This document shows, one piece after another, positions 22,647 through 58,781 of a stretch of DNA of 64,000 nt (position 1 is the first letter of the stretch; the number at the start of each line of letters is the position of its first letter). Under the pieces are notes generated by a model that made no database searches, had not been told where the DNA came from, and saw nothing but the letters and a program-made list of their open reading frames with translations. The stretch lies in IMG/VR virus record IMGVR_UViG_3300023174_000040, positions 124,001 through 188,000 of that record. One strand, 5' to 3'. The position numbers and the translations under genes are program-made.

Positions 22647-22979
22647 ATGGAAATCCAGTATGGTCTGAATCTTTCTACTGGCTGTCGTGATGTTGATTTT
22701 AAGCCTGAGTCTAACTTTTACAGTCCCAAGGCTAAGACTAGCGGGCGTAATTATAAGGTTAGTCTGAATCAGTTTATTCATACCATCAATGCAGTTTTTG
22801 GTAACGGCGGCGACTATTCTGATGTTGCCAAGGAACTTGGCGTCACTAATAGTGCCGTCTATAGCAGGGTTAAGAAGTTGCGGGAAACAGTCCCAACGCT
22901 TCCCAAGATTGATAACCGTTCTAGCGATACTGCTGTTGAGGCGGCTGCTATTCTCGCTAAACTCGGTATCAACCAGTAA
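22647..22979 (+). CDS. HTH protein, paralog 1 of 6
   Basis: GGDYSDVAKELGVTNSAVYSRVKKLRE. Confidence 0.75.
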   Translation: MEIQYGLNLSTGCRDVDFKPESNFYSPKAKTSGRNYKVSLNQFIHTINAVFGNGGDYSDVAKELGVTNSAVYSRVKKLRETVPTLPKIDNRSSDTAVEAAAILAKLGINQ

Positions 22980-23211
22980 TAATAGGGAGATATATCATGG
23001 AAGATAAGATTCCGTCTTATATGTTGGAAGATTATTATTCTAATCTCTTGTCTTATATCCGAATGGAATATATGACAGAATACACAGAGATGACAGAGCC
23101 TATGAAAAAATGCTTCTTGCATCTTTGGACTAATAATACTCCGATCCCTAATGCTGCGTTTTATTTTCATAATAGTTTTCGATCTGATTATACACTATAA
23201 GGGGATATAAA

Positions 23212-23673
23212 ATGAATCGTGAAGAATGTCGTGTTGGTATGAATGTTATTTTCGGTAGTGGCAACGGCGAGAAAACTCGTGGAGTTGTAATTAAAGTAAA
23301 TCCAACTAAGGCCAAGGTTAGAACGACCGAAAATCGTGGATACAGGCATGAGGCAGGTACTGTTTGGACTGTTCCTTATTCCTTACTCCAGGCCATTGAT
23401 GATAATGGAACGGTTGTTGAGAAGGAAATTAAATATAATCCATTCACCCATGTTGATAATTTGATTCTTGAGGCCGTTCTTTGTTGTTATGGGGAACTTA
23501 GTCCCGAAAATTTGAGTTGCGACGGAGAAGCCAGTTATCTCCAGATTGTTAATAAGAAGAACAGTATCAGCAAGAAGTTGAAGGGCTTGCTTATGGCCTA
23601 TGGGATGGAGGTTAGTGAAAAGCAAATCTATGATTGGCACGATAGCAAGCGTCAGTATGAAAGGAACAAGTGA
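23212..23673 (+). CDS. hypothetical phage protein (SH3/KOW-like N-terminus)
   Basis: VG.NV.FG..G.V.KVN..AKV; LSPENLSCDGE. Confidence 0.6.
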   Translation: MNREECRVGMNVIFGSGNGEKTRGVVIKVNPTKAKVRTTENRGYRHEAGTVWTVPYSLLQAIDDNGTVVEKEIKYNPFTHVDNLILEAVLCCYGELSPENLSCDGEASYLQIVNKKNSISKKLKGLLMAYGMEVSEKQIYDWHDSKRQYERNK

Positions 23674-24260
23674 TGTCTGATCAAATTGATAGGGTATTTG
23701 CTTTTGAAGCATATGATATTGCAATTAAGAAGGGAAGGCATCCCGAACTTGAAAAACTGATAGCAATGTCACCGGAATCGAGTGTATCTTATGCCATCCA
23801 TCTTAAAGCCTCGCAAGGCGATAGTTTTAAAGAAGGAGAGGAAAGTATTTCCAAAGACCCTGTTTGCTCTTTGAACTATGCTAAAAAGGTATTAGAGGGC
23901 CGTTTTAAACTTGGCGAACCCGCCATTTCAAAAGATGCCAAAAGTTCTTATGAGTATGCCTTAGACGTTATTGGCGGTCGATTTAAAATGGGAGAGCAAG
24001 CAATCTTAGATTCTGCTCGTAGAGGAAAAGATGTTAAACTGGCCGCTCTTTATGCCGCATCTATAATTGGGGGCAGATGGGAAGAAGCAGAGCCCTTTAT
24101 AATGCAGGTTCCAACACTCATTCTTCCTTATGCCACCGAGCTTATTAAGGGCCGCTGGCATGAGGCAGAGAGTAAGTTGGTAGAATACAGTGACCTTTCA
24201 AGAAAATATGCCAAAGAAATGATTAAACTTCAAATCCCAGTTCTTTCTTTTGTTGAATAA
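23673..24260 (+). CDS. helical-repeat phage protein
   Basis: ~6 copies of YAxxVxxGRF/WxxGExAI. Confidence 0.7.
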   Translation: MSDQIDRVFAFEAYDIAIKKGRHPELEKLIAMSPESSVSYAIHLKASQGDSFKEGEESISKDPVCSLNYAKKVLEGRFKLGEPAISKDAKSSYEYALDVIGGRFKMGEQAILDSARRGKDVKLAALYAASIIGGRWEEAEPFIMQVPTLILPYATELIKGRWHEAESKLVEYSDLSRKYAKEMIKLQIPVLSFVE

Positions 24261-24262
24261 AA

Positions 24263-24847
24263 ATGAAACTTAAATTTGATCTTGATTTGACGGATAATAA
24301 GCACCTTCGCAATCATTTGGTAAGGAATGTTCTTTGGTATTTTAAAGATAATATCGACAGAACCAAAGAACTTGATGATTATTTCTGCACCAGTCCAGCA
24401 CTTGCCTATAAGTATCTAAAAGTGTTTCTTGAAAAAGGGGATAAAGCCTCTCCTGAGATTGAGAAGGTTCTGAGCAAAAACATTCATTATCTTTTTTCTT
24501 ATTTTCAGCACACCGAAAATCATAAAGTTCAAGACGAAAAGTTGCAGAAAAGACTTGATAAGAAGATCTACAATGATCCCCGCCTCTCATACTGTTATGC
24601 TTATAGTGTTCTAAAGTCTAGAATACCAGAAGAACATGAAGGTGTTTTCCTCAAAAACTACGACTTTGCATATCGCTATGCTTGCGAAGTAATCGGGGAC
24701 AAATTCCCAGATAGTATTCACAAAATGCTACTTCTTTCGAGTTTTGAAGAAAATGACAAGGAAAAATATGGTCTTAAAAAGTATATTGAATGTTGCGAGA
24801 AAAAAGAATTTAAATATGTTGGAAGAAATTGGTATGATAAGTTTTAA
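24263..24847 (+). CDS. helical-repeat phage protein
   Basis: YCYAYSVLKSR, YRYACEVIG; HKMLLLSSF. Confidence 0.65.
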   Translation: MKLKFDLDLTDNKHLRNHLVRNVLWYFKDNIDRTKELDDYFCTSPALAYKYLKVFLEKGDKASPEIEKVLSKNIHYLFSYFQHTENHKVQDEKLQKRLDKKIYNDPRLSYCYAYSVLKSRIPEEHEGVFLKNYDFAYRYACEVIGDKFPDSIHKMLLLSSFEENDKEKYGLKKYIECCEKKEFKYVGRNWYDKF

Positions 24848-25566
24848 TTTAATAAAGAAAATCTAGGTTTCTCATCCTTATAACTTTCAAAATCGTGCCT
24901 ATCGGCATAGGGATTAGTTACTATAACGCTCATGGCAACTGCCTTTAAAGGACTCTTTGTAAAAACCCAAAACTCTGGGTCGTTATAACGTGGGCCTATT
25001 GGTATATCTAATCTCTTAATATGGGATCCTTTAGCCCACCAGAAATTTCCAGAATAATGGGGCGGTGGATTATCGTCTAAATCACAACTTATTCTACAAC
25101 TATCCGGAGTGAACTCTCCCCAATAATTTGGGCCAACTAAGTCGTATTCATTTAAAAAATCTAGGCATTCTTGGTGTTTATCCACAACAAAATACATTAA
25201 TTTATCAGTCCATGATTTTATATTTGGGAAGCAAGAATCATTCATTTTACTTGCTCCTTTTGAGTGAAAGTATAAAACTTTATCCTCGGGTTTGGCTATT
25301 GAATATAGCTTATGAAGTGTAGTTCTCTCTCCTTCATTTTCTTCATCTGTTAGGTTTATAGTGAACTTGGGAGAAATTCCTCTGATATTGTTTGCTACGA
25401 ACTCTCTAGAAATGCCAGTTATGATTATGTTAAAATAATCAAGCCTATCTAAAATCCCAGAATTAACAGTTCTTTCTAATATAGGCTTTATCACCCCTAG
25501 ACTTCTCTCTGACGGTGCGTAAATATGATGAAATGCCAGATTTGACATGAAATAATATAGTTTCAA
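24844..25566 (-). CDS. glycosyltransferase-like protein
   Basis: YFHSKG...HYSGNFWWA..EFW motifs. Confidence 0.6.
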   Translation of the reverse strand: MKLYYFMSNLAFHHIYAPSERSLGVIKPILERTVNSGILDRLDYFNIIITGISREFVANNIRGISPKFTINLTDEENEGERTTLHKLYSIAKPEDKVLYFHSKGASKMNDSCFPNIKSWTDKLMYFVVDKHQECLDFLNEYDLVGPNYWGEFTPDSCRISCDLDDNPPPHYSGNFWWAKGSHIKRLDIPIGPRYNDPEFWVFTKSPLKAVAMSVIVTNPYADRHDFESYKDEKPRFSLLN

Positions 25567-25647
25567 CTAGTAAGAAATAAAAATCATTTATAGCAAGCAT
25601 ATATAATATTGGATGGAATAATCCATCCAATTACAAGGAGGTTTATT

Positions 25648-25860
25648 ATGAACGATTATCTAGCTAAGCTCTATGTTACACCAAATAACAAGTATACAAC
25701 TGAGGGTTGCTTAGACACCAGTGTTTATAACGGTGTTAGTTTACAAAGAACACTCAACATGATTTCAACACCAGAAGAAATCGTTGTTGTTGTTAAAGAC
25801 GGAGCCGGTTTTTCAACAAGTGCCGAACTAACCGTCACCCCAGGTTTCATCGCTGACTGA
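25648..25860 (+). CDS. small hypothetical protein
   Basis: AAGGAGG RBS; CATATATA upstream; terminator 25890-25930. Confidence 0.6.
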   Translation: MNDYLAKLYVTPNNKYTTEGCLDTSVYNGVSLQRTLNMISTPEEIVVVVKDGAGFSTSAELTVTPGFIAD

Positions 25861-25956
25861 TATTTTTAATTTATAATTTAGATTATAAATGCACCCATGG
25901 GAGTAAAATCCTGTGGGTGTTTTCTTTTTTTATGATCCATGATATAACCAAGAATC

Positions 25957-26337
25957 ATGAAAATAGAAATGACAGAAGATGATTTAGTGCTAGCGGCAAA
26001 TAAAATAAGAAAAAATATTCATAGAAATATGATAAAACAAATAAAATCAGGAAGAAAGGCTAAGGATTTAGTTGGAAAGGTTCAAGAATATCTTGAAAAA
26101 AGCAAATTAGACTCGTTTTTAATGCTTGAAGAAACTGTTCTAATTATGAGAGCCTTCTGCAAAAAGAAAAATGATCTACTAATCATAAGCGATGATGAAA
26201 AAACAGCAGAGAAAATAGCTAATGATCTTTTCCAAAGAGGGGTAAATAATATATTGAATATCATGGCAAAAGAAGATGTTCTAGATTGTAGTTTTGACAA
26301 TGATACTAATGATTTTTATTTCAATATGAAACAATGA
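25957..26337 (+). CDS. hypothetical protein
   Basis: ORF. Confidence 0.55.
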   Translation: MKIEMTEDDLVLAANKIRKNIHRNMIKQIKSGRKAKDLVGKVQEYLEKSKLDSFLMLEETVLIMRAFCKKKNDLLIISDDEKTAEKIANDLFQRGVNNILNIMAKEDVLDCSFDNDTNDFYFNMKQ

Positions 26338-27269
26338 AAAAATATAATTGCTTAATAATGAATAATGAGGTCTGGCTCCTGGAGGCTAGACTGGAGTATG
26401 ACTTAAAATATTTTGATTTTATAATTTTAGCCGAAGCAAATTCTACTTTTAGCGGTTTAAGTAAGCCCTTTTTCTATGAAAAATATAAAGACATATTTAA
26501 AAAATATGAAGATAGGATCTTATATGTTAAACTCGAAAATTTACCAAAACCATACAAGGGTAATTTTTTAGGACATAATAATTTCAAGGCAAAAGAAAAT
26601 CGTTGGATAGTTGAATTTTACCATAGAAACTATTTACAAAACGCAATACTGCAGATTGCCAAAGAAGGAGATTTGATTTGCAACCAAGATATTGATGAAA
26701 TTCAAAATATAGATTCTTTAAACAAAATAGACAATCTAAATTACATAAATTATTTATCGTACTATGATTTTAGATTCACTATTTTAGATGATCCATTATC
26801 AAATTTTGCAGAAAAGGCATGGCACAAAGGCTTTGTAACTTCTTTTGAAAATTTACAAAAAATCAATATACACGACTATAGGAATATAAATAAGCATGAT
26901 GATTATTTTTACTTAAGTCATATCACCCCGGCAGATTTTAGATTCGATGATCAAGATCAAAATCACATGGTGTATAATTCATACAGGGCCCCTGTCCAAG
27001 ACATTAGCATTATTTACTCACCAATTGGTTGGCATGTATCATCTATGTCTTGTCACTCAGATAATAACACAAAAGTAAAATGTTTTGCACATCAAGAATT
27101 CGCAAACACTTTTGATAAAATTATAGATTTTGACTTAGAAAAAACAACAGAAGATATCGTAAATAAATTCATAGACAAAGATGATAAGAATGAAATTCAT
27201 GCGTTAGCACCACAATTTTTGCAAAATTCAAGATTCACCTCTCTATTCAAACAGCATTTAAAGGAGTAA
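26334..27269 (+). CDS. GT17-like (beta-1,4-GlcNAc transferase-like) glycosyltransferase
   Basis: NE..LLE.RL; EAN.TFSG..KP; DIDEI; GWH; FAHQE. Confidence 0.75.
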   Translation: MKKYNCLIMNNEVWLLEARLEYDLKYFDFIILAEANSTFSGLSKPFFYEKYKDIFKKYEDRILYVKLENLPKPYKGNFLGHNNFKAKENRWIVEFYHRNYLQNAILQIAKEGDLICNQDIDEIQNIDSLNKIDNLNYINYLSYYDFRFTILDDPLSNFAEKAWHKGFVTSFENLQKINIHDYRNINKHDDYFYLSHITPADFRFDDQDQNHMVYNSYRAPVQDISIIYSPIGWHVSSMSCHSDNNTKVKCFAHQEFANTFDKIIDFDLEKTTEDIVNKFIDKDDKNEIHALAPQFLQNSRFTSLFKQHLKE

Positions 27270-27471
27270 AAATGAAAGACGAGATTCACATTGAAGAACA
27301 AGATCTGTATAGCGAATACGTTGCAATGTCGGAAATAATGTATTGTTATGAATTGGAAGAAATTAATAATAAATTAGCAGAAATTTATATAGAAGAATAT
27401 CTTGACAAATAGTTTCCCTCCGGTACGGTCTAGGGGTGTCGAGAGAGAAGCCCCAGAGGAAACTATTTAAT

Positions 27472-27675
27472 ATGAACGACTTGATTGAAAAAGCCCTCGT
27501 TCGTTTCCCGAAAGCGAAAAGAATCGCCGTAGAGAACTTTACTATGGGCTATGAAAGTCTTAGTAGTGAGGCTCAATCTAATTTGGAGTTGGACGCTAGA
27601 CTTTACGATTGGAATAAAGACACAATTAACGCCATTATTAGCATTTTATCTTCAAAGGAAATAGGGAGAGGCTGA
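27472..27675 (+). CDS. hypothetical protein
   Basis: follows motif copy at 27422. Confidence 0.6.
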   Translation: MNDLIEKALVRFPKAKRIAVENFTMGYESLSSEAQSNLELDARLYDWNKDTINAIISILSSKEIGRG

Positions 27676-27676
27676 A

Positions 27677-27967
27677 ATGGATTCTAATAATTTCATGAGG
27701 ATTTTTGACGATAGGAATGAGCATAAACTTAGCATTGTTGCCTGTGGAAATGGGTATGATCTTTGCTGCCCAAACGGCAAGGTGGTTTACTGCGGGGTTG
27801 ATCCAGAACTCGTTGAAGTTCTTGAAGATTATCTTATTGTTAAAGAATTCAATCTTATTGTTAAAGAATTCAATCTTATTGATAAAGAATTCAATCTTAA
27901 AGAATTCAATCTTATTGATAAAGAATTCAATCTTATTGATAAAGAATTCAATCTTATTGACGTATGA
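27677..27967 (+). CDS. hypothetical protein with LI(V/D)KEFN tandem tail
   Basis: GGAGAGG RBS; repeat is in frame. Confidence 0.55.
   Translation: MDSNNFMRIFDDRNEHKLSIVACGNGYDLCCPNGKVVYCGVDPELVEVLEDYLIVKEFNLIVKEFNLIDKEFNLKEFNLIDKEFNLIDKEFNLIDV
27831..27960. repeat. 21-bp tandem repeat (ATCTTATTGWTAAAGAATTCA) x~6, one unit shortened to 15 bp
   Basis: read directly; no spacers. Confidence 0.9.
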
Positions 27968-28719
27968 CCATGAATAATATCTTCGATAAGTATAGTGCAT
28001 ATGAATTGCGACAAATATACGCAAGTCCCATTAGTGATTGGCCCGAACCATTTAAGAACTGGATTCACAAAGAAATAGCAGAATCACTTTTGGATTCTTG
28101 GCTTAAGAATGTTGATGACAATGAATATCGTGATCGTGTTCACGAAATTGTAGAGAATATGACATACGGTTATCCAGACAAAAATGGCAACAAAATGCTA
28201 GATTTGCCAATATACTTGGCGGCTGGCACACCAGTAAAAGCCAACATAAATGGAGAGTGGCTAGTTGGTAAAAAATTAGAAACTCCCAAAAAATTTGAAA
28301 TGCTGGGTAGTTTTTCAGATAATAAAACTATCCTAGTTGAAATAGATGGAAAAGAACTAGCAGTAAACAAAGATTTGGTGAAAGTTTTTGAACCTTTGAT
28401 GGTTGATGACAATGGAAATAAACCTAAACTAGAAGAATTTAAAAAAGATTTTAAGATTCTTGCGATTAATCTAAGTGACCCAATCAACAAAATTAATATC
28501 GACTATAATAAAGCCGAAATTGGCAATGAATTCATCAGAATATATCCAATAATCCAAGAACACGAATACAGATATGCTTTTCGAGAATATCCTTGTTGGG
28601 CTGTTGAGCAAGTTATTTTGGGAAAAAGAATAATAATTGCAACACCAATTGATACCATGATAGCAGTAAATTTATTTATAGACCGGCTTAAGTTTATCAA
28701 GTCTCGTTGGTTATTTTAA
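27964..28719 (+). CDS. hypothetical protein
   Basis: 251-aa ORF; contains EMLGSF. Confidence 0.6.
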   Translation: MTMNNIFDKYSAYELRQIYASPISDWPEPFKNWIHKEIAESLLDSWLKNVDDNEYRDRVHEIVENMTYGYPDKNGNKMLDLPIYLAAGTPVKANINGEWLVGKKLETPKKFEMLGSFSDNKTILVEIDGKELAVNKDLVKVFEPLMVDDNGNKPKLEEFKKDFKILAINLSDPINKINIDYNKAEIGNEFIRIYPIIQEHEYRYAFREYPCWAVEQVILGKRIIIATPIDTMIAVNLFIDRLKFIKSRWLF

Positions 28720-29660
28720 ATATAATAACATATATCACAGCGTGATGAATAAATAACTTTATGGAGAGCAAAATCTAATATTTAAAATTTAAGGAGGAAT
28801 ATGTGGGAATGGAATCTCTATATTTTGTTGAAAAGAAATGAATCTTGGGAGATAGTTGAAAAAAATAGTGGCATTGCCTCTGGTATTGCCTCTCTATCAT
28901 TAGGTGCTATACTTGGTTTCTTACTGGCCTGCTTGGTGGGATATTATCTATGAGCGAGATACTAGCACCTAGATTCCCTATGGTTGAAACCAATTCAATG
29001 GAATCTTATACAATCGAACAAATCAAAGATTCCCCGTATCTTTTGTGCAAATACTCGTTTCAAAAATCAAAAGGCAAATTGCCAAAAGATTTGCACGATG
29101 CAATGACATTACACGGTATGATTAATGCCAAAGATTGGTATGTTAGATTTTATTTTGACCGGATTCTATCCGGAGAAAATATTGATGATATTCTTCCCTG
29201 AGAAATCCAAATGTTAGTCAGCGAAATTAAATCCTGGGCGAAGAAGAATGGCTACATAGTCAAAACTGTAAAGGGTGTTGGCTATGAATGGAATAAAGAA
29301 GGCACAGATGAAAAGAACACCGATGATGACTTGAATGAAATGGCTCGCAAGATTTTCAATAAAATAACGGATAACAAATTTATTGATTATCAAGAAGAAC
29401 AGAAACTAAAGTGATGTTGTTTCCTTCCGGTACGGTTTCCTCAAAGGAGTCTGCTATGTTGTATCTACTTTTCACTTTTTATCTTTGGACGATGGGTGTG
29501 GTTAATTTCGATAATAATACAGATGATGTAGAAAATATGATCGCTAGGGCCAGATGCCGACAAATATCAGTTGACAACAACAACTGCGTCACCGTAAAAT
29601 TCCTCAACAGGGAGGATGCAGAACTTTTCGCAAAAGACCTCAAACGCCTCACAAAGTAAC

Positions 29661-45361: not shown

Positions 45362-45445
45362 GTTTCCTTTTGGTACGGTTGGTGGTTGTTCCCGATTCAA
45401 CGTGAGTCTGGAAGAAAGGGTTGTTTAAAGAGGGAGTTTAATACT

Positions 45446-45700
45446 ATGGGTCGTGCTAAGGGTCAGGCTGGTGTGTCGCTGGAGCGTTTCCTTACCTGTG
45501 TCATCGAGACGCAGCGGGCTGGTGGTAGCGTTGAGGATGTTGCGAACGAACTGGGCATTGTGGCCGGTTCGGTTTCGGTGCGTCTTTCGCAGTTGCGGAA
45601 GAAGCATGGTCTGAACATCCCTCGCTTTGAGGGTGGTGGTCGGACTAGCAACACCGCTGAACGGGCAGCGATGATCCTCGCCTCGCTTGGGGTTGAGTGA
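45446..45700 (+). CDS. HTH protein, paralog 2 of 6
   Basis: GGSVEDVANELGIVAGSVSVRLSQLRKK; GGAG RBS; GC hairpin after. Confidence 0.8.
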   Translation: MGRAKGQAGVSLERFLTCVIETQRAGGSVEDVANELGIVAGSVSVRLSQLRKKHGLNIPRFEGGGRTSNTAERAAMILASLGVE

Positions 45701-45858
45701 TAGTTAAATCTTCTCCCCTCCCCCTTTAATGTGGGGGAGGGGAGGGGTTGACGAAAAGTTTGTTTCTGGTACGGTAGTGTTTTGTTGCGGCTTTAGTTAA
45801 AAAGCAATAGTATGTTGCTATGGTTGAAACTTTGTGGAAAAACTTTAAGGAATAACTA

Positions 45859-46406: not shown

Positions 46407-46479
46407 GCGGCTTTAGCTCAATTGGCAGAGCAAGGGGCTTTTAACCTCTAGGTTCCGGGTTCGATTCCCGGAGGCCGCA
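46407..46479 (+). tRNA. tRNA-Lys(TTT)
   Basis: acceptor GCGGCTT/AGGCCGC; AGGGG-CT-TTT-AA-CCTCT; TTCGATT T-loop; no encoded CCA. Confidence 0.95.
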
Positions 46480-46502
46480 CTCTTTCTGTACGGTGAGTGA
46501 GC

Positions 46503-47449: not shown

Positions 47450-47810
47450 AATGAAGATTTTTGTAGTATTTGATTTTCCGGAAATTAAAGATGCTAATAG
47501 CGAGGAAGCCACTTTTGAGATTGATAGTCTGAGTGAGGATGTCAATGGTCTTGGTTATAATTGGTATATTGATGAAGTTATAGGAGAAGAGGATAAAGGT
47601 TGACCAATATCCTCTATTAGATTATAATAGAGGTATTATGGAAAAATATAATTGGATTGTTTGGAAGAACAACCGAATAGCAGGGTATGTATCTGCTTAT
47701 AGCGAATGGGACGCAATTAGATTTGCCAGAATGAAGTTTGGTTGTGAAACCTGGGTAGAAAGAACGGTAGAATCTGGTACGGTGTGAGGGCGTCACACGG
47801 AGAACTCTAG

Positions 47811-48041
47811 ATGCTAGACGATATTGACTTTAGTGATTTCATTCTTGGTGGTGAAACTGAAACCGCTCAGAAGAAGAATAAGAGAATCCCCCTTGAAGTT
47901 TTCCTCAAGAGTATTGTAGAAGCCGTCAAGAATGGCGGAAACAGTATTAGTGTTGCAAATGAATTGGGGATCTCTCCTCAAGCAGTAAGGCAGCGTTGTC
48001 ATAAACTCCGGGCTAAGGGAGCCCCTGTGCCACAATGGTGA
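47811..48041 (+). CDS. HTH protein, paralog 3 of 6
   Basis: GGNSISVANELGISPQAVRQRCHKLRAKG. Confidence 0.75.
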   Translation: MLDDIDFSDFILGGETETAQKKNKRIPLEVFLKSIVEAVKNGGNSISVANELGISPQAVRQRCHKLRAKGAPVPQW

Positions 48042-48326: not shown

Positions 48327-48413
48327 GGAATCTTGGCCGAGCGGATTATGGCAGCGGTTTACTAAACCGCCGAAGGTTAAAATCTTCCGGGGGTTCGAAT
48401 CCCTCAGATTCCG
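48327..48413 (+). tRNA. tRNA-Ser(ACT), class II
   Basis: acceptor GGAATCT/AGATTCC; G73; GCGGT-TT-ACT-AA-ACCGC; long variable arm; TTCGAAT. Confidence 0.9.
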
Positions 48414-48466
48414 TTTTATGGAATAATAATATGGATTGGAACGGTTTTCGGTACGGAATAAAAAAG

Positions 48467-49604: not shown

Positions 49605-50010
49605 TGAATGAACATATCAAGACTTTTTTAAGTGAAGGTTTCGACTTTATAATCGGTAATCATGTAAGCGGATTTAGAGTTGCAGTTAGAGATAGTGAAT
49701 ATGGTGAAGTAACTTTTAGTACAGGCAATGATGTTGAAACTTTAATGCTTGATTGCATTAAACAGTTTGACAATAGTGTGAAAGTTAAAGCGGCTGAGAA
49801 GGTTAAGAGACTGGCGAGAAGGAAGAAGGAAATACAGAAGGAACTTGAAGAAGTTTCAACTGAACTGGCAAATATAACTCTGAACTCATTCCAGAAATAA
49901 AAAGAAATAAACAGAGAAACTTGTCTTTTGGTACGGTTGATGGACGTTGCGACGGTGAGCCACTTCGGCAAACGGCAACAAAGGGTTGAATAACGCAGGA
50001 GATTACTACT

Positions 50011-50265
50011 ATGGGTCGTCAAGTTGGACAGAAGGGTGTCGCTCTGGAGAAGTTCCTGACCACGGTGGTCGAGACGCAGCGGGCCGGCGGTTCGGTGCAG
50101 GACGTTGCCGATGCTCTGGGCATCACGGCCGGTTCGGTGTCGGTGCGTCTCTCGCAGTTGCGGAAGAAGCACGGTGTGAACGTCCCCCGGTTCGAGGGGT
50201 CGGGCCGCACCAGCAACACCGCAGAGCGGGCGGCTGAGATTCTCGCCAGCCTTGGGGTTGGTTGA
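50011..50265 (+). CDS. HTH protein, paralog 4 of 6
   Basis: GGSVQDVADALGITAGSVSVRLSQLRKK; terminator 50298-50340. Confidence 0.8.
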   Translation: MGRQVGQKGVALEKFLTTVVETQRAGGSVQDVADALGITAGSVSVRLSQLRKKHGVNVPRFEGSGRTSNTAERAAEILASLGVG

Positions 50266-50363
50266 AGTTAAAGGCTGATATAATAATCGGCCATAAGAAC
50301 CCCCTCCCGTAAAACGGAGGGGGTTTATTTTTTATTTGTTATAGACTATATTGTTTTTGGTAC

Positions 50364-50438
50364 GGCCCTATCGTATAGCCCGGTCTAGTACATCCCCCTT
50401 TCACGGGGAAAACATCGGTTCAAATCCGATTAGGGTCA
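50364..50438 (+). tRNA. tRNA-Glu(TTC)
   Basis: acceptor GGCCCTA/TAGGGTC; TCCCC-CT-TTC-AC-GGGGA; TTCAAAT. Confidence 0.92.
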
Positions 50439-51143
50439 TTTAATCCACTTCTTGATTGTGTTGCCTGTAACACCATATTTTCTTCCTGTGGCATTATAGC
50501 CGTTTACTTTTATTTCATTTAAAAGCAAATCCATTTCAGGTCTTTCTACTTTTCTCATCTTCATAACTTGTTGTTTATGTATATGGGATACGTAACATCC
50601 AGCACAATATTTGCTGCTCTTTGAAACTTTTTTATCACATAAGATACACAAGTGTTTAACAAACCTTTTGCCACTATGAGTATGTGTTTGGCTATGACAG
50701 TTAGGACAAAGTAATCTTAAGTTTTCAATTCTATTGTCATTTGATATACCGTTAATATGATCTAATTGTATTGTTAATGGTTCACCATGCCACTCACCAT
50801 TGTTTCCACATTTAGAACATTTATTTTCCCATCCTAGTTCAATAAGTAATCTTCTTTTTAAATTACATCTATTATAGGTTGAGTTTTTAACCATAACTTG
50901 TGAAAGAGGAATTTTCTCTGATTGAAACTTCCTTCCCTTATTACTACCTAAGCCTAATTTAATATGGGAATAATCAATCTGCTCTTCGTCCAATCTTCGT
51001 TTAAGTATTTTGTACGATGCTCCACTTGAAACCATTTCGCATTTCCGTATAATCTCTGCTATGCTACTTGAAGATTTAACAATCTCCATCATTGTCTCTT
51101 TAGGTATCTTCCAGAATAAACTTGTTCGCTCCCTTTCACGCAT
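50436..51143 (-). CDS. HNH homing endonuclease
   Basis: CxxC..LDHING...DNR.ENLRLLCPNCHSQT; C-terminal HTH; stop overlaps tRNA-Glu 3' end. Confidence 0.9.
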   Translation of the reverse strand: MRERERTSLFWKIPKETMMEIVKSSSSIAEIIRKCEMVSSGASYKILKRRLDEEQIDYSHIKLGLGSNKGRKFQSEKIPLSQVMVKNSTYNRCNLKRRLLIELGWENKCSKCGNNGEWHGEPLTIQLDHINGISNDNRIENLRLLCPNCHSQTHTHSGKRFVKHLCILCDKKVSKSSKYCAGCYVSHIHKQQVMKMRKVERPEMDLLLNEIKVNGYNATGRKYGVTGNTIKKWIK

Positions 51144-51707: not shown

Positions 51708-51860
51708 TTTTGGTACGGTGTGGAGTCAACGAGATACAAACTGTGTGTCTGCCGACAGTATGGCACGGATGAAGATTACGGATATTTCGGGGATAGTGAT
51801 TTTTGATTTTGGTACGGTTGTGGGTTGTTCCGAAACAAACATTCTTCAAAGGATTAGAAA

Positions 51861-52163
51861 ATGTTTTACCTTCAGATTGCCAGTTTAGTTGTTGGATTAC
51901 TTGTTGCTTGTCTCCAGTGTGGTAAGGAAGCCGCTCCTGTTGTTCACACTATTGTGGAGGCAAGAAAGCATCATCACAATGAACCCCAATATAATGTCTA
52001 TAGGGGTTATGATAATAACTACCGGTATTGGAGTGATTCTACCGGAACATATTGGTGCAGGGTGGATCGTCAAGGCTCTATGGAGATTGCTGTGGTGAAT
52101 CAGTCCTCACAATCTCAGCAGCAGATTATGATTTGTCAGACGCCCAACAACACGATTCGTTGA
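51861..52163 (+). CDS. possible lipoprotein or secreted protein
   Basis: hydrophobic N-terminus ending LVAC. Confidence 0.5.
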   Translation: MFYLQIASLVVGLLVACLQCGKEAAPVVHTIVEARKHHHNEPQYNVYRGYDNNYRYWSDSTGTYWCRVDRQGSMEIAVVNQSSQSQQQIMICQTPNNTIR

Positions 52164-52650
52164 TTCCGGTACGGTTCAAGAATACCTCAAAGGAGAAAAA
52201 CAGTGGACAACTGGACTATTATCGACGATACTAAACTCCGCCACGTTTGGCGTTGTGCAGATTGTGATTGTGTTACTCATGTTACTCCGTGGTGGTATGA
52301 AGATGCCGGAACCCCGGTATGCGAAAAGTGCGGCGAAGATATGAAGTATCTTAGCACAGAGTTCAATAACATCTAGTACGGGTTTACCTTACCCAAGGAG
52401 CGGAGCAAAAGATGAACACTGAACTGGAACAAATCGCAAGGGCTATCATCGGCATTAGCGTTGCCGATCTTACTAACGCCGAAAGAATCATCTATAAGAT
52501 TCTGAAGAAGCGTAACATCGTTTGTGAACGGGGTCATTATGTTGAACTTACTAATGATCCAGAACTCAATGCCCACTATGATGAAATGGAAATGTATAGT
52601 CAGAGTCAAGAGTGGCCCGAAGATTATCCCTTCTAGTACGGTGAATAAAA

Positions 52651-52824
52651 GTGAAAATCATTATTGAAGTGAACATGGACAACGATAGTTTCAATGATAA
52701 CCCCAACGAACTGGGTGAGATTCTAACTCAAATCCCCCATAACATTAAAGCGGGGGATAGCGGTAATCTCAAAGACTCTAACGGCAACAAGGTGGGATTT
52801 TGGGACGTATTTGAAAGTTTCTAG
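52651..52824 (+). CDS. small protein (57 aa, GTG start), candidate leaderless
   Basis: GTG 9 nt after AGTACGG; D.NGNKVG.W. Confidence 0.55.
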   Translation: MKIIIEVNMDNDSFNDNPNELGEILTQIPHNIKAGDSGNLKDSNGNKVGFWDVFESF

Positions 52825-53944
52825 TACAGGTATCCTATAAGCGGTGGAAGTCAAAAACGCCACTGGACGTTAGACCAGTATGGATACTTCTAAGGAAAAG
52901 AAAATGTATTGGATTTCTCGCTGGAAAGTTTTCACAATGAAAAACTGGATTTGCTACAATCTGTTTGGTGAACATCCAGATGATGTTGACACTTTTGGCA
53001 TGGTTAGTGGGCTAGGCATTTTGGCTTTCTTGATTTTTTGGACTAGTTATCTTTTTATCTATATTCCTCTTTATTTCTGTCGCTAAAGGATTGAACTAAT
53101 GGATACCATTGATACTCTCAAGATTTGATACTCTCAAGATGCTCAGGTGATACTCTCAAGATGCTCAGGATTTTTGTGGATACTGCTCCCCTGAATAGTC
53201 AGGGTATGGTTGAGCCTGATACTCTCAACTTCATTAGCATGAGGCTGGGTAGTATTGTTGAAACTCTGGAGCGAGAAAAAACTCTCTCTGATGAACTCCG
53301 TCAGATTTTGGTACGGTAAAGGTTTGTCCTAAACATCACTAAACATCACTAAAGAGTAATAAAAATGACAATAACAGACATTTTCATCATCGGTATGTAT
53401 CTAACTAGTCTTTTTGGTACGGTTGTGATCGTAGCGAGTTTCTTTTGGGTGATTGACACTTTGGTCAATGCACTTTACAAGCCAACCTCTAAGATTAAAA
53501 CCATGATTGCTGAGGATGGTAATGAATGGCAGGTGGGGTACATTGACGAGTTCCCCGGCTATAAGAAACTTTTTTAGTACGATCAATCATCAAGGAGAAA
53601 ACCAATGAACGACTTCTACGATGGATTCTATGAAGATTGGTGGGGGACTAAGAATGTGAAGGGTCACGACGCCCACAAGGGATACAATAAACACGATATT
53701 GCCTCAAGGAGAAACTATCGGGACAGGGTATTAGAATACCTTAGACTGGAGTTTTGTGATATTGGGGATTGGTGGCATCTCCCCATCAGCGGTGTTAATA
53801 TCAACAGGGTATTGTTAATCAGCCTTATTAACGACTGCCAGAATGATAATATGAAGATCAACAACGCCAGCGGTGTTGTCTATGAATGGCTGAAGGGCAG
53901 GAATCTGATTTAGTACGGTGAATAGGCAACAGAGGAGAGTAACA

Positions 53945-54265
53945 ATGCAAGAACAAGTCGAACTTTGGCTCGCTGCTTTGACTGAGAAGTCTAACACCAC
54001 TGGGGCTGAGACTAAATACATTCTTGAACCGGGGCGAAAGTATACTAGAGTGGTTCGTCAAGAGCGTTGGCTGGGTAGTAACGGGGAACCGCTGTGGGCG
54101 GTTAACAAAAGTGTCCATGCCTTTATAGACCAAAATGGGGATATTTATAAGGCAGCAAGTTGGAAGGCTCCGGCCAAAAATGGAGCAAGATTTAATGTTG
54201 TGAACGATATTCAACGGTTGGTCGAAGTTTGTGATCCCTATGGTAGTTATCTCTACAAGAGGTAA
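53945..54265 (+). CDS. T4-like-phage hypothetical protein
   Basis: GRKY...VHAFID..GDIYKAASWKAPAK..RFN. Confidence 0.7.
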   Translation: MQEQVELWLAALTEKSNTTGAETKYILEPGRKYTRVVRQERWLGSNGEPLWAVNKSVHAFIDQNGDIYKAASWKAPAKNGARFNVVNDIQRLVEVCDPYGSYLYKR

Positions 54266-54881
54266 GATCAGGTACGGTTATCAACCAGAGGAGAATAACA
54301 ATGCTTTGGCAAAAGAAAAAGAATCGGTATAATACCAAGCCGTATTACGAAGCAAAAGAGGGAGATGTTGTGTATCAACTCCGATATATTCCCTTCAAGG
54401 GTTGGCAAGCATCAAGGCAGGAAGGCAACAGTTGCACCCTGCCGGGAATAAAGAAGGACATGGCGGAGGCTATGGGCTGGTGCATGAGTAACCTTTCGGT
54501 ACGGTAGAGAGATATGGAAAACAGTTTTTACGGTTTCTGGTCAAAGGGAGAAAAAATGCCAGACGATACAAAAACTAGTAGTGGTCTTGACCGGCAAACT
54601 TTGAGTTTCCTTGAAGATTATTACGCAAGGGAGACTGTGAAGCCGGTTTCAAGCCTTATCGAAGCCGCCACACAGTTTGAAAAGGAGCCAGATTTTAAGA
54701 ACTATCTGGCTATGAGGGATCTTTTTAGGGATATTGAAGCAAATATGACACGGAGAGACGCCTTCCGTTGTCATAATCGGTAAAGGATAAGATTCGGTAC
54801 GGTTAGGGTTTGTTCCGACAGCAAGCCAATGAGGCAAGCGGGAACCAAAGGGTTGGTAACTATAAGCAGGAGATGATTACT

Positions 54882-55142
54882 ATGGGTCGCCAAGTTGGTC
54901 AGAAGGGTGTTGATCTTGAGACGTTTCTCACCACGGTTATCGAAGTGCAGCGGGCTGGTGGCAGCGTCGAGGACGTTGCAAGCAAGTTGGGCATCGTTCC
55001 GGGTTCGGTGAGTGTTCGTCTGAGCCAGTTGCGGAAGAAGCACGGGCTGAACATCCCGAAGTTTGAGGGTGGTGGTCGCACCAGCAATACCAAGGAGCGT
55101 GCGACGGAGATTCTCGCCAGCCTTGGCGTCGAGATGCTCTGA
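54882..55142 (+). CDS. HTH protein, paralog 5 of 6
   Basis: GGSVEDVASKLGIVPGSVSVRLSQLRKK; GC hairpin 55154-55189. Confidence 0.8.
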   Translation: MGRQVGQKGVDLETFLTTVIEVQRAGGSVEDVASKLGIVPGSVSVRLSQLRKKHGLNIPKFEGGGRTSNTKERATEILASLGVEML

Positions 55143-55362
55143 AGTTAGTCACACTCACCCCCCGGCCAAATAACAGGCCGGGGGGTGAGGCCCACGGGTT
55201 TCCAGTGGGTACGGTTGGTGGTTCCTGGTTGAAGCCGGGAATCTGACTGGTTGTGAATAACTAAGAGAATAACTAAGAGTTTCATCATGATGTGCTTCCT
55301 TGGATTGTGTAGCGGTATTATTTCTATTATCATTGATAATAACAACCCACGCTAAACAATCT

Positions 55363-55409
55363 TCGACCGTCCCGTTTGGGGATTCACTAGGTTCAATCCT
55401 AGCGGTCGA
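55363..55409 (+). ncRNA. mini tRNA-like structure without anticodon arm
   Basis: TCGACCG/CGGTCGA stem; CCC-GTTT-GGG hairpin; CTAGG-TTCAAT-CCTAG T-arm. Confidence 0.4.
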
Positions 55410-56520
55410 TTTTGGTACGTCGATTTTGGTACGGTAAAACTTCAAAGGAGAATCCAAATGTGGCTTGCAATGGTCATTCGTGACAGTGTTCCTGAGAGTG
55501 TTACCAGTTTCGACAACTACTATGATGCAGTGGGTTGTGCGGACGATTGGATTATTAAGTTTGACCCGTCAGTAACTCATTCAACCCTCCCCCGATATTC
55601 TAGGGGTGAGAGTTACCATAAGGATGGTTTGAGGGTAGATATTCTAGAAATCAACTAGAAACTAGAATCTGGTACGGTCGGGAGTTGTTACCCGAAACGA
55701 AAGGAAATCATGGCGTTAGAAACCACTATTGATGATCTGGTTCAGCGGTTCGGAGAAGAGCCGTTCCCATGCACCTTCATCCATCGGTTCGACCCCGAAA
55801 GGGTGGCGGCATTCGACCGTGAACGGGCGGTACACTGGCTCATCGGCAAGGTCAATGGACCGAAGATCATGTTATCACTCCTGCCGGATCGTCTTGTGTT
55901 CGAGGAGTTGATTGATTCATTGGATTCCTATGGTTGGAATCTGCTGGTCGAGGGTGGCATTAACTATCGCATCAAGAGGCATGACTAGAATCCGGTACGG
56001 GTTAGTGTTGTTCCCTTACCACTTCTCAGGAGTTAAAGATGAAAGTTAGTAAGACTCGTCGCCTGAAGTTGCTCAAGGACATGGAAGCCTCAAAGGAGAT
56101 TCACCAGCGGGGTCACTACACTGTCAACGAGCGGGTTCTGGTTGATACCATCGTCGGCATCATTGAGAATCAGCGGATGATTGAAATATCGGAGGTTGTG
56201 GAACCGGAATCTAGTACGGGTTAGATTTGTACGGTATATTATTTGTAACAACAACCCCTCAAGGAAAAATCAAGATGAACCTCCAGATTAAAGTCGAGAA
56301 GTATATGGACGTTGTGAACGGCAAAATGGCACGGAAGGATTGGATCGAATCTTGCTTTGCAGGTGATATGTATGAAGCAGTTATGTTCGTGAAAAGACTT
56401 TTTCAGAAGGGCGTTAAACTTCCCTGCGGAGATCGTCTTCCTTATCCTAAGGAGGGTTGATAAGGAAAATAGATTCCAGTACGGTTTAGAGTTGAGACCC
56501 AACCACTAAGGAACCAGAAG

Positions 56521-56925
56521 ATGCCGTGGCAAATCGTTGATGAACCCAAGCCAGTCCAGTTCTATCCGGTCGAGACAGATAATGGCACAGAGTTTCGTCG
56601 GGTTGGTGGTCTTATGGTCAAGGGAACCATTCGACACTCCAAGGCTGACGAGGATCAAGTCTGGCGGGTTGTTTATACTAATCGGGCCGGAAGAGGCACT
56701 TTTAGTATTACGGCTCCAGATCGCACCGTAGAGCGTCAGAATCACAAACTAGACTTTGTGAAAGTAAAGGCTAAGGCTACGGTCTACAGGAACGGGAATC
56801 GTAAAGGTGGAATGACCCCTCACGCTTTCCAGCGGGAACTAGCAGAAATGTGCGGTGGAAACTTCGCTGGTAGTTTCTATGGTCAAATGGTCAATGCTGT
56901 GAAGGTGGCATTGGGGGCCGAATAA
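56521..56925 (+). CDS. hypothetical protein
   Basis: motif upstream; long hairpin terminator 56938-57005. Confidence 0.65.
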   Translation: MPWQIVDEPKPVQFYPVETDNGTEFRRVGGLMVKGTIRHSKADEDQVWRVVYTNRAGRGTFSITAPDRTVERQNHKLDFVKVKAKATVYRNGNRKGGMTPHAFQRELAEMCGGNFAGSFYGQMVNAVKVALGAE

Positions 56926-58535
56926 AGAGGAATAAAGTCCCCCCGATCATATTGCCGATTCCACGCTTTGCGTAGAGTTTTCAATATGATCGGGGGATTT
57001 TTTTGTTCTTTCCTTTTATGTTTTTGGTACGGTAAAAAACCAAAAGGAGAAAAAGTGATGACCCCAGAGCAAAAAAATATCATCGACCGTGCTCTTAGCA
57101 CTCTTATCTGGGAGACTAAGAAGAATATTCTGGACACCCAGAATAGCGGTGAGTTTGATGCCGCAGTCAAACAGTTCCTCGTTGAACAGAGGAAGTTATT
57201 GGAGGATGCAACCATACTCCGAAAGGAACTCAGGGAAGAAAGTCTTTGGAATCCAGTACGGTAAAGGTTTGTCTTAACCCTAGCCCAAAGGAAAAACAAA
57301 TGTTCAAGAACATCAAGTGGTTCGATGGATTGTCTTGGGTCAGTGGTTACATTCTGGAGATCATGTTCAAGGACGGTAAGAAGGGTTACATTAAGAATAC
57401 TGACCGCAAAAAGATTAGTCATCTTTTTGAAACTTTGTGGAACGACCACAACATCATCGGTTTGACCGTCTATAATATTGATGAAAAGGTTGAGGATGCT
57501 AAGTATCGTTATCTTGGTTGAAATAGGTACGGTAAACTCTTGTTCCATCAACAAAGAGGACTAAAAGAAATGACTGCCGTTATCACTGGCCCGAATGTTG
57601 AAAAGTATCGTCTGCTCAGTCTCAAGAGTGCATTGAAGTTGGAGACTAAAGGATTGAAGCACTCAAGGTTCAACGTCAGCCAGATTGTGAAAGGTATTCT
57701 GGCCGAAAAGGGAATCAAGCCTAAGAATAATAAGATTCTGTTGCTCGTCCAGTTTGAAACCTACTTGGAGGGGGTCATCTGAGGCTTATGTCTGGTACGT
57801 AAAAGGCTTACCCCCGGAGAACTTGTGATGGCCGCTCGTTACGTTACCATCTCTGAAAACATGATTGAGCCTAGGCTCCTTGTTGAAGGTTACTTAAACG
57901 CAAACACAATAGCAGAACGCAGAGAGGCATTTCACTTATATCGTGTATTAACTGAAAGTGAAATGAGTCAAGTCGCTAGAGAAATGGGTTACATTGCCTT
58001 GGTTGATCTTAATCCAAGGTGGATTGAAACCAGTTACTGTAGATTTTATGTTCGGTTAACCTAGGGTAAAACCTAGGTTAACTTTTTAAGTTAACAACTT
58101 AATGTCTGGGTACGTAGAAGGGGTACGCTTTCGGTACGGTAAACTCTTGCCGATAACTCTGGGAGTTTCATCATGAAGAAGTATGAAGTAACCTGTTGTG
58201 ACACGGGTAAAACAATAGTCTTGACTCATAAAGAGATGGTCGAAAAGTTCGGCAAGGTTGAGTTCAAAGAGATTCTGAAAGGATACCTTCCCCATCTGGT
58301 CGCTGTTGAAGTATTCAGTACGGTAGATGGTTGTGAACCCAACACTCAAAGGAGAGTCTAATGGATGACTTTGACCACTTTGATATGATGCAGGAAACAG
58401 TCCTCTGGCCTTGGGTTGATGATCCAAGTTATGACAATGAAGATGCAGAGGATGAATGTAACTATGATCCAACGGAAGAAGAAAACTAGTACGGTAAGAA
58501 ACTGTTATCTTTCAATAACCAATAAAGGAAAAACC

Positions 58536-58781
58536 ATGAAGCGTCAGACTGTTAGCGTTGAAACGTTCGTCAATGTCATCATGCGGCATCTCAACAATGG
58601 TGGAAACCAAACCAGTGTTGCTAAGGAGTTGGGAATCACTCCGGCAGCGGTTTGCCTCCGCCTCAAGTATCTCCGTCAGAACGGTGCTTGTGTTCCTAAG
58701 ACTAAGAAAGAGTTGAAGTCTCGCCGGAACAAGGCAAGTATCGTGGCCGCTGCCAACAAGGAAATGAAGGGTTGGAAGTGA
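58536..58781 (+). CDS. HTH protein, paralog 6 of 6
   Basis: GGNQTSVAKELGITPAAVCLRLKYLRQNG; GC hairpin after. Confidence 0.75.
   Translation: MKRQTVSVETFVNVIMRHLNNGGNQTSVAKELGITPAAVCLRLKYLRQNGACVPKTKKELKSRRNKASIVAAANKEMKGWK

What the first reader, a model, noticed from the sequence alone, without database searches (positions are those of the whole stretch)
22647..58781. Six paralogous stand-alone HTH proteins resembling sigma region 4, each behind its own GGTACGG site
Seen: the ORFs at 22647, 45446, 47811, 50011, 54882 and 58536 share L/V-E-x-F...GG-x3-VA-x2-LG(I/V)-x3-V-x2-R-x3-LR. Three (45446, 50011, 54882) are near-identical and GC-richer than their neighbours. Most are flanked by an upstream motif and a downstream hairpin. 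Known: GxSxxExAxxLGIxxGTVxSRLxRxR is the ECF sigma region 4.2 pattern, AsnC/BirA-type HTHs look similar, and T4 AsiA/MotA show phages can remodel sigma region 4 while extended -10 promoters escape. Inference: a dosage-amplified family that either binds the motif or its upstream class-specific element, or decoys host sigma4 functions so that only phage promoters fire. Together with the motif array this is the best candidate for an undescribed system here.
Basis: partly seen in the sequence, partly recalled or inferred. Interest (0 to 1): 0.8.

Follow-up and report, generated by a model that had tools for sequence, protein, structure and literature searches.

The report
Multi-copy small HTH proteins of a giant phage
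A giant freshwater phage carries eight copies of an unannotated small DNA-binding (helix-turn-helix) protein, each on its own short, probably highly expressed transcription unit; they look like ordinary phage regulators, not sigma-factor fragments, and what they bind is unknown.

Summary
All six ORFs are real paralogs, and two more lie outside the window. Each of the six sits 28-79 nt behind a copy of the phage's strand-specific RGTACGG motif; four are followed by strong GC hairpins.

They are the GC-richest genes in the genome. Only the coding cassette is duplicated, not the neighbouring genes.

The sigma region 4 reading is not specifically supported. No Pfam model reaches its cut-off, and Sigma70_r4_2 ranks behind P22_Cro, HTH_24, LysR and Fis-type models. 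No sigma factor appears among the listed fold matches, and none of those matches is significant. The nearest outside relatives are proteins built of 5-12 tandem copies of the same module.

Having "its own site" is not special to these genes: 24 of 32 called genes in the dense block have one.

In three diverged lineages the motif core changes (GGTACGC, GGTACGT), yet multi-copy HTH genes still sit directly behind motif sites. Conserved subfamilies exist across lineages.

Best reading: abundant, probably dimeric DNA-binding regulators of the phage transcription programme. This is a new, unannotated family of a known kind. Whether they bind the motif is untested. The enzyme that reads the motif was not found in the 323 kb available.

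The parts
22647..22979 (+). HTH paralog, 110 aa, with an N-terminal extension. Its orthologous subfamily is also present in the diverged relative L030.
22573..22579 (+). GGTACGG site of class A (upstream GTTTCCCTCC), ending 67 nt before the ATG of the 22647 gene.
45372..45378 (+). GGTACGG site of class A, ending 67 nt before the ATG of the 45446 gene.
45446..45700 (+). HTH paralog, 84 aa, member of the MGR-type trio. GC 0.59.
45710..45747 (+). GC-rich hairpin after the 45446 gene, followed by the next motif site at 45768.
47776..47782 (+). GGTACGG site (upstream GGTAGAATCT), ending 28 nt before the ATG of the 47811 gene.
47811..48041 (+). HTH paralog, 76 aa, lacking the C-terminal helix. Orthologs occur in L030 and in many metagenome contigs.
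49930..49936 (+). GGTACGG site ending 74 nt before the ATG of the 50011 gene.
50011..50265 (+). HTH paralog, 84 aa, trio member. GC 0.65 and GC3 0.75. This is the protein that was modelled.
50297..50326 (+). Intrinsic-terminator-like hairpin with a T run after the 50011 gene.
54796..54802 (+). GGTACGG site ending 79 nt before the ATG of the 54882 gene.
54882..55142 (+). HTH paralog, 86 aa, trio member. It is the only part of window 53000-58999 covered by contigs from two lake metatranscriptome runs (54845-55198).
55153..55189 (+). GC-rich hairpin after the 54882 gene. The next motif site is at 55208.
58488..58494 (+). Variant site AGTACGG, 41 nt before the ATG of the 58536 gene.
58536..58781 (+). 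HTH paralog, 81 aa. This subfamily is also conserved in L034 and L042.
58786..58823 (+). GC-rich hairpin after the 58536 gene. The next motif site is at 58827.

Best explanation
The six ORFs, plus two more outside the window, form a virus-restricted, unannotated family of small DNA-binding proteins.

Architecture: a basic N-terminus; a three-helix HTH (helix 1, GG turn, helix 2 ending in LG, then a recognition helix of form xxAVxxRxxxLR); a short KGxxhP segment; a glycine-rich flexible linker; and one C-terminal amphipathic helix.

Inferred: they bind DNA as dimers or higher oligomers.

Shown: each gene is its own short unit, running from an RGTACGG site through the gene and, for four of the six, to a hairpin. 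Codon composition matches the most GC-rich, probably most expressed, genes. The phage clade keeps at least four distinct orthologous subfamilies and repeatedly duplicates one of them.

Most likely function (inferred): abundant transcription regulators of the phage's non-structural gene programme. They would act at sub-elements of the RGTACGG promoter class, including their own promoters, as repressors or activators. They are probably not the polymerase's core promoter-recognition subunit and not sigma region 4 mimics.
For: - HTH nature: many sub-threshold HTH Pfam hits all fall on the same 30 residues. The AF2 model has pLDDT 74, helices at 12-24, 29-36, 40-52 and 69-81, and a disordered linker at 64-69.
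- Fold neighbours are DNA-binding domains of LysR, Lrp/AsnC and LuxR types.
- Oligomer inference: natural fusions of two phage-type modules exist (P0079), as do proteins with 5-12 tandem modules.
- Distinct functions: conserved orthologous subfamilies with subfamily-specific recognition helices occur across lineages.
- Own units and high expression.
- Only the cassette is duplicated; the neighbours are not.
- In diverged relatives every HTH gene sits directly behind a motif site. L030: 2 of 2 HTH genes, 4 sites in 18 kb. L034: 4 HTH genes, 12 sites in 6.9 kb. L042: 4 HTH genes, 11 sites in 16 kb.
- The only repeated DNA elements in window 44-61 kb are the motif and its flanks, so multi-site targets would have to lie there.
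Against: - No binding data exist.
- No operator-like repeat separate from the promoter was found.
- The recognition helices are rich in small residues (S, A, G, V), which may mean low sequence specificity.
- Recognition helices do not co-vary with the motif's changes between lineages (G, C or T at position 7; different upstream 10 nt).
- Remote family members occur on short contigs with no motif array (L035, L044).
- The RNA evidence comes from assembled contigs of libraries that may hold DNA, and the runs were found using this region.
Confidence: 0.45

Rival explanations
1. Abundant architectural proteins. The family coats or bends phage (or host) DNA with little sequence specificity, like the histone-like proteins of other large phages. 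Copy number and codon bias would serve dosage.
For: - Extreme GC3, and the family is the largest paralog family in genome 30-190 kb.
- Monocistronic strong units.
- Only the HTH unit was recovered from RNA libraries.
- Recognition helices are dominated by small residues plus conserved Arg and Lys.
- Tandem-array relatives exist.
Against: - Distinct orthologous subfamilies with subfamily-specific helix 3 are conserved across lineages, which suggests different targets.
- An HTH with a single recognition helix is more typical of site-specific binders.
Confidence: 0.2
2. Promoter-specificity cofactors. One or several paralogs recruit an RNA polymerase to RGTACGG promoters, and subfamilies select the upstream classes (GTTTCCYTYY versus GAWTYY types). 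This would work like a sigma cascade, or like a DNA-binding cofactor that a phage polymerase needs.
For: - Family and motif co-occur in all four motif-bearing lineages examined.
- No sigma region 2, T7-like polymerase or multisubunit polymerase signature was found in 323 kb.
- Promoter flanks fall into classes that change along the genome.
- The paralog at genome 74562 has a deviant site (GGTATGC) and could be made first.
Against: - Seven of eight paralogs are themselves behind the motif, a chicken-and-egg problem.
- Recognition helices do not co-vary with motif changes.
- The contig is only about 64% complete, so a polymerase or sigma may simply be missing. The PF00940 search also had no working positive control.
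- tRNA positions put the start inside the motif, so no upstream element is left for a sigma4-like reader.
Confidence: 0.12
3. Selfish or relic cassettes. The module is the DNA-binding domain of a transposase or homing-endonuclease lineage, spreading as a promoter-plus-gene cassette with no role in phage transcription.
For: - Only the cassette is duplicated, at three sites 4.6-4.9 kb apart.
- Automatic names in source databases are 'transposase-like'.
- There are weak hits to transposase HTH models and PHROG transposase or HNH families.
- An HNH endonuclease lies next to the 50011 copy.
Against: - There is no catalytic partner domain and there are no terminal repeats.
- Orthologous subfamilies are stably conserved with synteny across relatives.
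- Codon adaptation points to long residence and use.
Confidence: 0.08
4. Sigma region 4 decoys. The proteins mimic host sigma4, bind the beta-flap or anti-sigma partners, and shut off host -35-dependent promoters.
For: - There is motif-level similarity to ECF sigma 4.2 (LGI-x4-V-x2-RL-x2-LR), and sub-threshold Sigma70_r4_2 hits cover the HTH.
- High dosage.
- An rIIA-like neighbour gene. T4, the phage where rIIA is known, remodels sigma4 (from general knowledge).
Against: - Sigma models score no better than a dozen other HTH models.
- No sigma factor appears among the listed PDB or Swiss-Prot fold hits.
- The closest outside relatives are tandem HTH_24-like arrays.
Confidence: 0.05

Closest known systems
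Small phage HTH regulators of the Cro type (Pfam P22_Cro PF14549, HTH_3 class)
   Same: Size (about 60-110 aa); stand-alone HTH; phage-encoded. This is the most frequent weak Pfam match across the family, 29 of 59 members. One tandem-array relative sits divergently from an Xre/cI-like repressor in a mobile element.
   Different: All scores are below the Pfam cut-off. Eight copies per genome in several conserved subfamilies. An extra KGxxhP segment, a Gly linker and a C-terminal helix. No lysogeny module nearby.
Lrp/AsnC-type winged HTH (Pfam HTH_24 PF13412, HTH_AsnC-type PF13404)
   Same: The pattern 'helix 2 ...LG(I/V)S, helix 3 xxxVxxRhxxLxxxG(V/I)' matches through the start of the wing. The best PDB sequence match to a natural protein is LrpA, E 8e-4. 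Tandem-array relatives score strongly on HTH_24.
   Different: No ligand-binding RAM domain. Single-module members stay below cut-off. No predicted beta wing.
LysR-family DNA-binding domain (HTH_1 PF00126)
   Same: An HTH followed by a separate long helix that mediates dimerisation in LysR proteins. These are the top Foldseek hits in PDB and Swiss-Prot models.
   Different: Foldseek E-values of 0.1 and above and TM about 0.4; no effector domain. This is a lead only.
ECF sigma factor region 4.2 (PF08281)
   Same: Three-helix layout and the LGI...V..RL..LR signature. Sub-threshold hits cover residues 26-53.
   Different: Below cut-off; only 8 of 59 members at E<=0.01. No region 2 anywhere in the genome. 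No sigma factor among the listed PDB or Swiss-Prot fold hits. Has the additional C-terminal helix.
T7-type promoter/terminator gene cassettes (for the motif context)
   Same: A compact, strand-specific element of about 18 bp (positions -10 to +7 around GGTACGG) with no -35 partner. If the motif is a promoter, the transcript start inferred from tRNA 5' ends lies inside it, at GG. Hairpin terminators lie between units.
   Different: No T7-like polymerase was found in the 323 kb available (that search had no working positive control). The invariant part would be partly transcribed. The phage has one T4-like neighbour gene, rIIA-like.

Membership tests
Sigma-70 region 4 (PF04545 / PF08281) | Sequence matches the Pfam model at or above its gathering score | tested here: not met
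   The best hit for the six is Sigma70_r4_2 at 18.0 bits against a cut-off of 25.7. Sigma70_r4 scores at most 12 bits. Only 8 of 59 family members reach E<=0.01, best 2.1e-5.
Sigma-70 region 4 (PF04545 / PF08281) | Part of, or partnered with, a sigma region 2 (-10 reading) domain | tested here: not met
   The proteins are 76-110 aa with no other domain. A PF04542 search of the whole 323 kb record found nothing, while 10 control genomes rang. The record is about 64% complete.
Sigma-70 region 4 (PF04545 / PF08281) | Fold closest to sigma4 among HTH folds | tested here: inconclusive
   Foldseek top hits in PDB and Swiss-Prot are LysR, Lrp/AsnC, MarR and LuxR-type domains, all with E of 0.1 or more and with no sigma factor listed. 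The viral library has one 'ECF sigma factor' entry at rank 20, E 0.3. Small HTH folds are poorly discriminated.
Sigma-70 region 4 (PF04545 / PF08281) | Binds the RNA polymerase beta-flap tip and the -35 element | not testable with these tools
   Needs pull-down or two-hybrid assays, or a complex prediction. There is no conserved element 17 bp upstream of the motif.
Lrp/AsnC (HTH_24 + RAM domain) | HTH_24 / HTH_AsnC-type model above cut-off | tested here: inconclusive
   The six score at most 17.1 bits on HTH_24 against a cut-off of 21.9. 25 of 59 members reach E<=0.01, best 6.2e-6. One member carries a precomputed PF13412 hit. The tandem relatives score 80-245 bits.
Lrp/AsnC (HTH_24 + RAM domain) | C-terminal RAM/ligand-binding domain | tested here: not met
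   Only a linker and one helix follow the HTH.
P22 Cro-like (PF14549) | Model above gathering score | tested here: not met
   The best score among the six is 18.9 bits against a cut-off of 30.2. 29 of 59 members reach E<=0.01.
T4 MotA / AsiA type sigma appropriators | Sequence similarity to the MotA or AsiA families | tested here: not met
   A PHROG scan of the six returns only generic HTH, transposase and regulator families at E of 9e-4 or weaker. None is a MotA or AsiA family.

The most novel reading that the evidence does not exclude
The HTH paralogs are the promoter-selectivity subunits or obligatory cofactors of a so far undescribed phage transcription system. That system uses compact RGTACG[G/C/T] promoters with the start site inside the motif. 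Different conserved subfamilies would choose different promoter classes, giving a sigma-cascade analogue built from stand-alone 80-aa HTH proteins, in a giant-phage clade with no recognisable polymerase or sigma gene.
Probability: 0.1. Interest if true: 0.8.

Novelty: new member of a known kind. Interest (0 to 1): 0.42.

Why it matters
Giant freshwater phages are known almost only from metagenomes, and how they run transcription is largely unknown. This clade has a very clear promoter-like signal: 87 co-oriented RGTACGG sites, conserved as GGTACG in diverged relatives. Its most amplified and most codon-biased gene family is a set of small HTH proteins that always sit behind that signal.

Even if they prove to be ordinary regulators, they are the obvious experimental entry point to the transcription programme of these phages. 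They are small, soluble-looking, and have a defined candidate target set.

The family is also large: 1879 representatives at E<=0.001 in the exhaustive search. It has no Pfam or PHROG description and includes unusual proteins with 5-12 tandem modules.

Tried and rejected
- **DNA similarity to GenBank phages.** Only tRNA and HNH fragments matched. tblastn of two family members against 50,697 phage records found nothing.
- **PHROG scan.** No family assignment.
- **Structured 5' leaders of the HTH genes.** Only the 22647 leader folds better than shuffles (z -3.1). The others do not, so this was dropped.
- **Sigma-54 reading of TGGTACGG.** This is my own comparison with the known TGGCAC-N5-TTGC layout: the downstream TTG(T/C) sits about 4 nt too far and is not conserved.
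- **MotA-box or T4-late style readings, with the start 7-30 nt downstream.** These are contradicted by tRNA genes starting at motif position +5, +8 and +20.
- **Hunt for the enzyme that reads the motif.** Nothing was found by PF00940, PF00623 or PF04542, by DFDGD/DxDGD regex searches, or by Pfam, PHROG and PDB scans of 36 large ORFs. phrog_3282 gave one weak hit that is just another generic HTH protein. A 728-aa neighbour of the 74562 paralog is rIIA-like, not a polymerase.
- **Scan of viral contigs for the L034-type motif.** Only chance single hits without arrays.
- **Further viral-contig searches with other subfamilies.** These gave only the two close relatives or marginal hits.
- **Literature search for the motif.** Nothing relevant.
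- **Second structure job.** An alignment of two-module fusion proteins was too heterogeneous for a useful prediction, so the job was not spent.

Full report
**Setting.** The window is bases 124001-188000 of a 323,267-bp IMG/VR viral contig. CheckV estimates it at about 64% complete. GC is about 36%. DNA runs that hold the sequence are lake and freshwater metagenomes. No GenBank phage is similar at the DNA level.

Gene content includes portal and virion proteins at the right end and an rIIA-like protein. It also includes NAMPT, proteases and RCC1-like giants. Related contigs carry T4-type RNA ligase, DNA ligases, UvdE, PcfJ and Cpn10. This is a giant tailed phage; its host is unknown.

**The observation.** An HMM built from them finds each member at E 1e-27 to 1e-39. 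It also finds two further copies at genome 71411-71689 and 74562-74816.

- The family is the largest paralog set in genome 30-190 kb.
- The three copies at 45446, 50011 and 54882 are 81% identical in protein. Their DNA similarity runs from the motif through the 5' leader to the stop codon and ends there. The genes between them are unrelated, so the cassette was duplicated, not a segment.
- All eight genes are GC-rich relative to their flanks. The trio reaches GC3 0.59-0.75 against a gene mean of 0.315 (sd 0.089).
- The same holds for family members in two diverged lineages. The bias is therefore a kept property of the family, most simply codon adaptation of highly expressed genes, not fresh import.

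**The motif.** GGTACGG occurs 46 times in the window, all on the + strand, against 1.6 expected. RGTACGG occurs 87 times forward and 4 times reverse in the whole record, almost all between 33 and 185 kb.

- Conservation spans about 18 nt: G-T-T-T-S-Y-T-T-Y-Y, then GGTACGG, then T. Nothing is conserved further upstream.
- From 33 to 169 kb the sites are sparse and uniform (GTTTCYYTYY). From 169.7 to 184.3 kb (window 45.7-60.3 kb) they are dense and have other upstream decamers, of GATTTT and GAATCT types, including AGTACGG variants.
- Many sites follow GC hairpins with T runs.
- Three tRNA genes begin at motif position +20 (Lys), +8 (Ser) and +5 (Glu, overlapping the last GG).
- If the motif is a promoter, transcription must therefore start inside it. 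This fits a compact phage-polymerase type promoter. It does not fit a -35, MotA-box or -10-only element. An RNA processing site remains a possible alternative, which I rate at about one in five.
- Structural genes lack the motif. Their upstream regions are instead enriched for AATATATA (19 of 153).

**Link between genes and motif.** All six window genes have an RGTACGG site ending 28-79 nt before the start codon. The outside copy at 71411 also has one. The copy at 74562 has GGTATGC at the equivalent place, conserved in a relative.

In the dense block this is the rule for every gene: 24 of 32 have a site. The link is nevertheless conserved in diverged lineages:

| Contig | Length | Motif form | Sites | HTH genes behind a site |
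|---|---|---|---|---|
| L030 | 18 kb | GGTACGC | 4 | 2 of 2 |
| L034 | 6.9 kb | GGTYTGGTGGTACGCTG | 12 | 4 |
| L042 | 16 kb | CCGGTGGTACGTTG | 11 | 4 |

Close relatives G001 and G002 have the same array and the same paralog set. Remote homologs on two short, GC-rich contigs (L035, L044) have no array.

**What the proteins are.** No Pfam or PHROG family is reached. Many HTH models hit the same 30 residues weakly. Counted over 59 family members, the order is:

| Pfam model | Members at E<=0.01 (of 59) |
|---|---|
| P22_Cro | 29 |
| HTH_24 | 25 |
| LysR HTH_1 | 21 |
| Fis HTH_8 | 20 |
| HTH_28 | 14 |
| HTH_11 | 12 |
| AsnC-type | 11 |
| Myb-like | 10 |
| Sigma70_r4_2 | 8 |

- The AlphaFold model (59-sequence alignment, pLDDT 74) shows three helices, a disordered Gly-rich linker and a fourth helix.
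- Foldseek finds only weak, generic HTH neighbours. In PDB and Swiss-Prot these are LysR, Lrp/AsnC, MarR and LuxR-type domains, with no sigma factor listed. The viral library gives mostly unnamed phage proteins.
- A word-indexed search finds 61 relatives, all metagenomic, many on contigs of 80-330 kb.
- The exhaustive profile search finds 1879 representatives. Its top hits are proteins made of 5-12 tandem copies of the same module, including the LRxxG(V/I)x(V/I)P tail. These score strongly on HTH_24.
- One tandem-array protein lies in a bacterial mobile element next to an Xre-type repressor. A natural two-module fusion of the phage type also exists (P0079).
- The ESM Atlas places the protein among unnamed viral clusters.

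It is no stronger than the likeness to several other HTH classes.

**Family history.** A tree of the core domain shows starred clades that join window genes to genes of other lineages:

- the 47811 type with L030;
- the 22647 type with L030;
- the 58536 type with L034 and L042.

One subfamily is duplicated independently within lineages: the trio here, and 2-3 copies in L034 and L042. Recognition helices are conserved within a subfamily whatever the local motif variant. The subfamilies are therefore old and functionally distinct, and one of them is repeatedly amplified.

**Expression.** Two lake metatranscriptome runs hold contigs that cover 54845-55198 and nothing else of window 53000-58999. 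That span is the 54882 unit, and it ends just before the next motif at 55208. The result fits a short, abundant transcript. The data are assembled contigs, DNA carry-over cannot be excluded, and the runs were found using this region.

**Reading.**
- Shown: a real, conserved, amplified family of stand-alone HTH proteins; private promoter-like sites, and hairpins after four of the six; extreme codon bias; co-occurrence with the motif across lineages.
- Inferred: DNA binding as dimers or oligomers, high abundance, and a role in the phage's non-structural transcription programme.
- Not shown: any contact with the motif or with RNA polymerase.

I rate regulators acting at promoter sub-elements as most likely (0.45). 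The rivals are abundant architectural binders (0.2), promoter-specificity cofactors (0.12), selfish cassettes (0.08) and sigma4 decoys (0.05).

**What reads the motif.** The enzyme was not found in the 323 kb. About a third of the genome is missing, so this absence is weak evidence.

Noticed in passing
window 6425-60280 (genome 33.6-184.3 kb): There are 87 co-oriented RGTACGG sites in two regimes. Sparse, uniform sites with upstream GTTTCYYTYY run up to window 45.4 kb. A dense, heterogeneous set (GATTTT and GAATCT types, plus AGTACGG variants) runs from 45.7 to 60.3 kb, nearly one per gene. The core is kept as GGTACGC or GGTACGT in diverged relatives (L030, L034, L042).
   Followed up: partly
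window 46407-46480, 48327-48413, 50364-50438: Three tRNA genes (Lys, Ser, Glu) start 13, 1 and -2 nt after the end of a motif copy. The Glu tRNA begins at the motif's sixth base. This places any transcription start, or cleavage, inside the motif.
   Followed up: yes
window 60142-60280: Four motif copies lie within 140 nt at the very end of the + strand block. No ORF follows them. Beyond is AT-rich non-coding DNA and a converging - strand gene.
   Followed up: no
genome 186-323 kb and 1-33 kb (outside the window): Structural-gene regions lack the motif. Their upstream 70 nt are instead enriched for AATATATA (19 of 153 genes), a possible separate late promoter.
   Followed up: no
window 50436-51143 (-): An HNH endonuclease gene sits on the opposite strand directly after tRNA-Glu and the 50011 HTH unit. 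It is the only part of this region with DNA similarity to other phages.
   Followed up: partly
window 391-1119, 11177-11869, 23670-24260, 24263-24847 (plus genome 54955-55542 and 106761-107645): A second paralog family of about 200-290 aa proteins with no Pfam match. Two members lie in the operon headed by the 22647 HTH gene.
   Followed up: no
window 58956-58993 and 59209-59246: Two identical 38-nt copies (hairpin end plus GTTCTAATCT plus motif), 253 nt apart. This indicates a very recent tandem duplication of a small gene unit.
   Followed up: no
window 53126-53169: A perfect tandem duplication of a 22-nt unit inside a small ORF, with a degenerate third copy at 53217.
   Followed up: no
window 52000-60000: The whole block is GC-richer (0.42-0.48) than the genome (0.36), not only the HTH genes.
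   Followed up: partly
genome 74562-78397 (L009, L015): The one HTH paralog without a canonical motif has GGTATGC instead. About 1.4 kb downstream lies a 728-aa rIIA-like (HATPase_c) protein; the equivalent relative locus L027 has a 378-aa gene between them. The order is conserved in L027.
   Followed up: partly
P0062, P0063, P0064, P0071, P0082 (metagenome proteins); L045: Bacterial or mobile-element proteins built of 5-12 tandem copies of the same HTH module, with a conserved C-terminal tail. One sits divergently from an Xre-type repressor, near an integrase and an AbiU2 gene.
   Followed up: partly
genome 46187-47005 (L051:1027-1845): A 272-aa protein with a weak sigma4/LuxR-like HTH (Sigma70_r4 E 0.012). 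It is a further uncharacterised DNA-binding candidate outside the family.
   Followed up: partly
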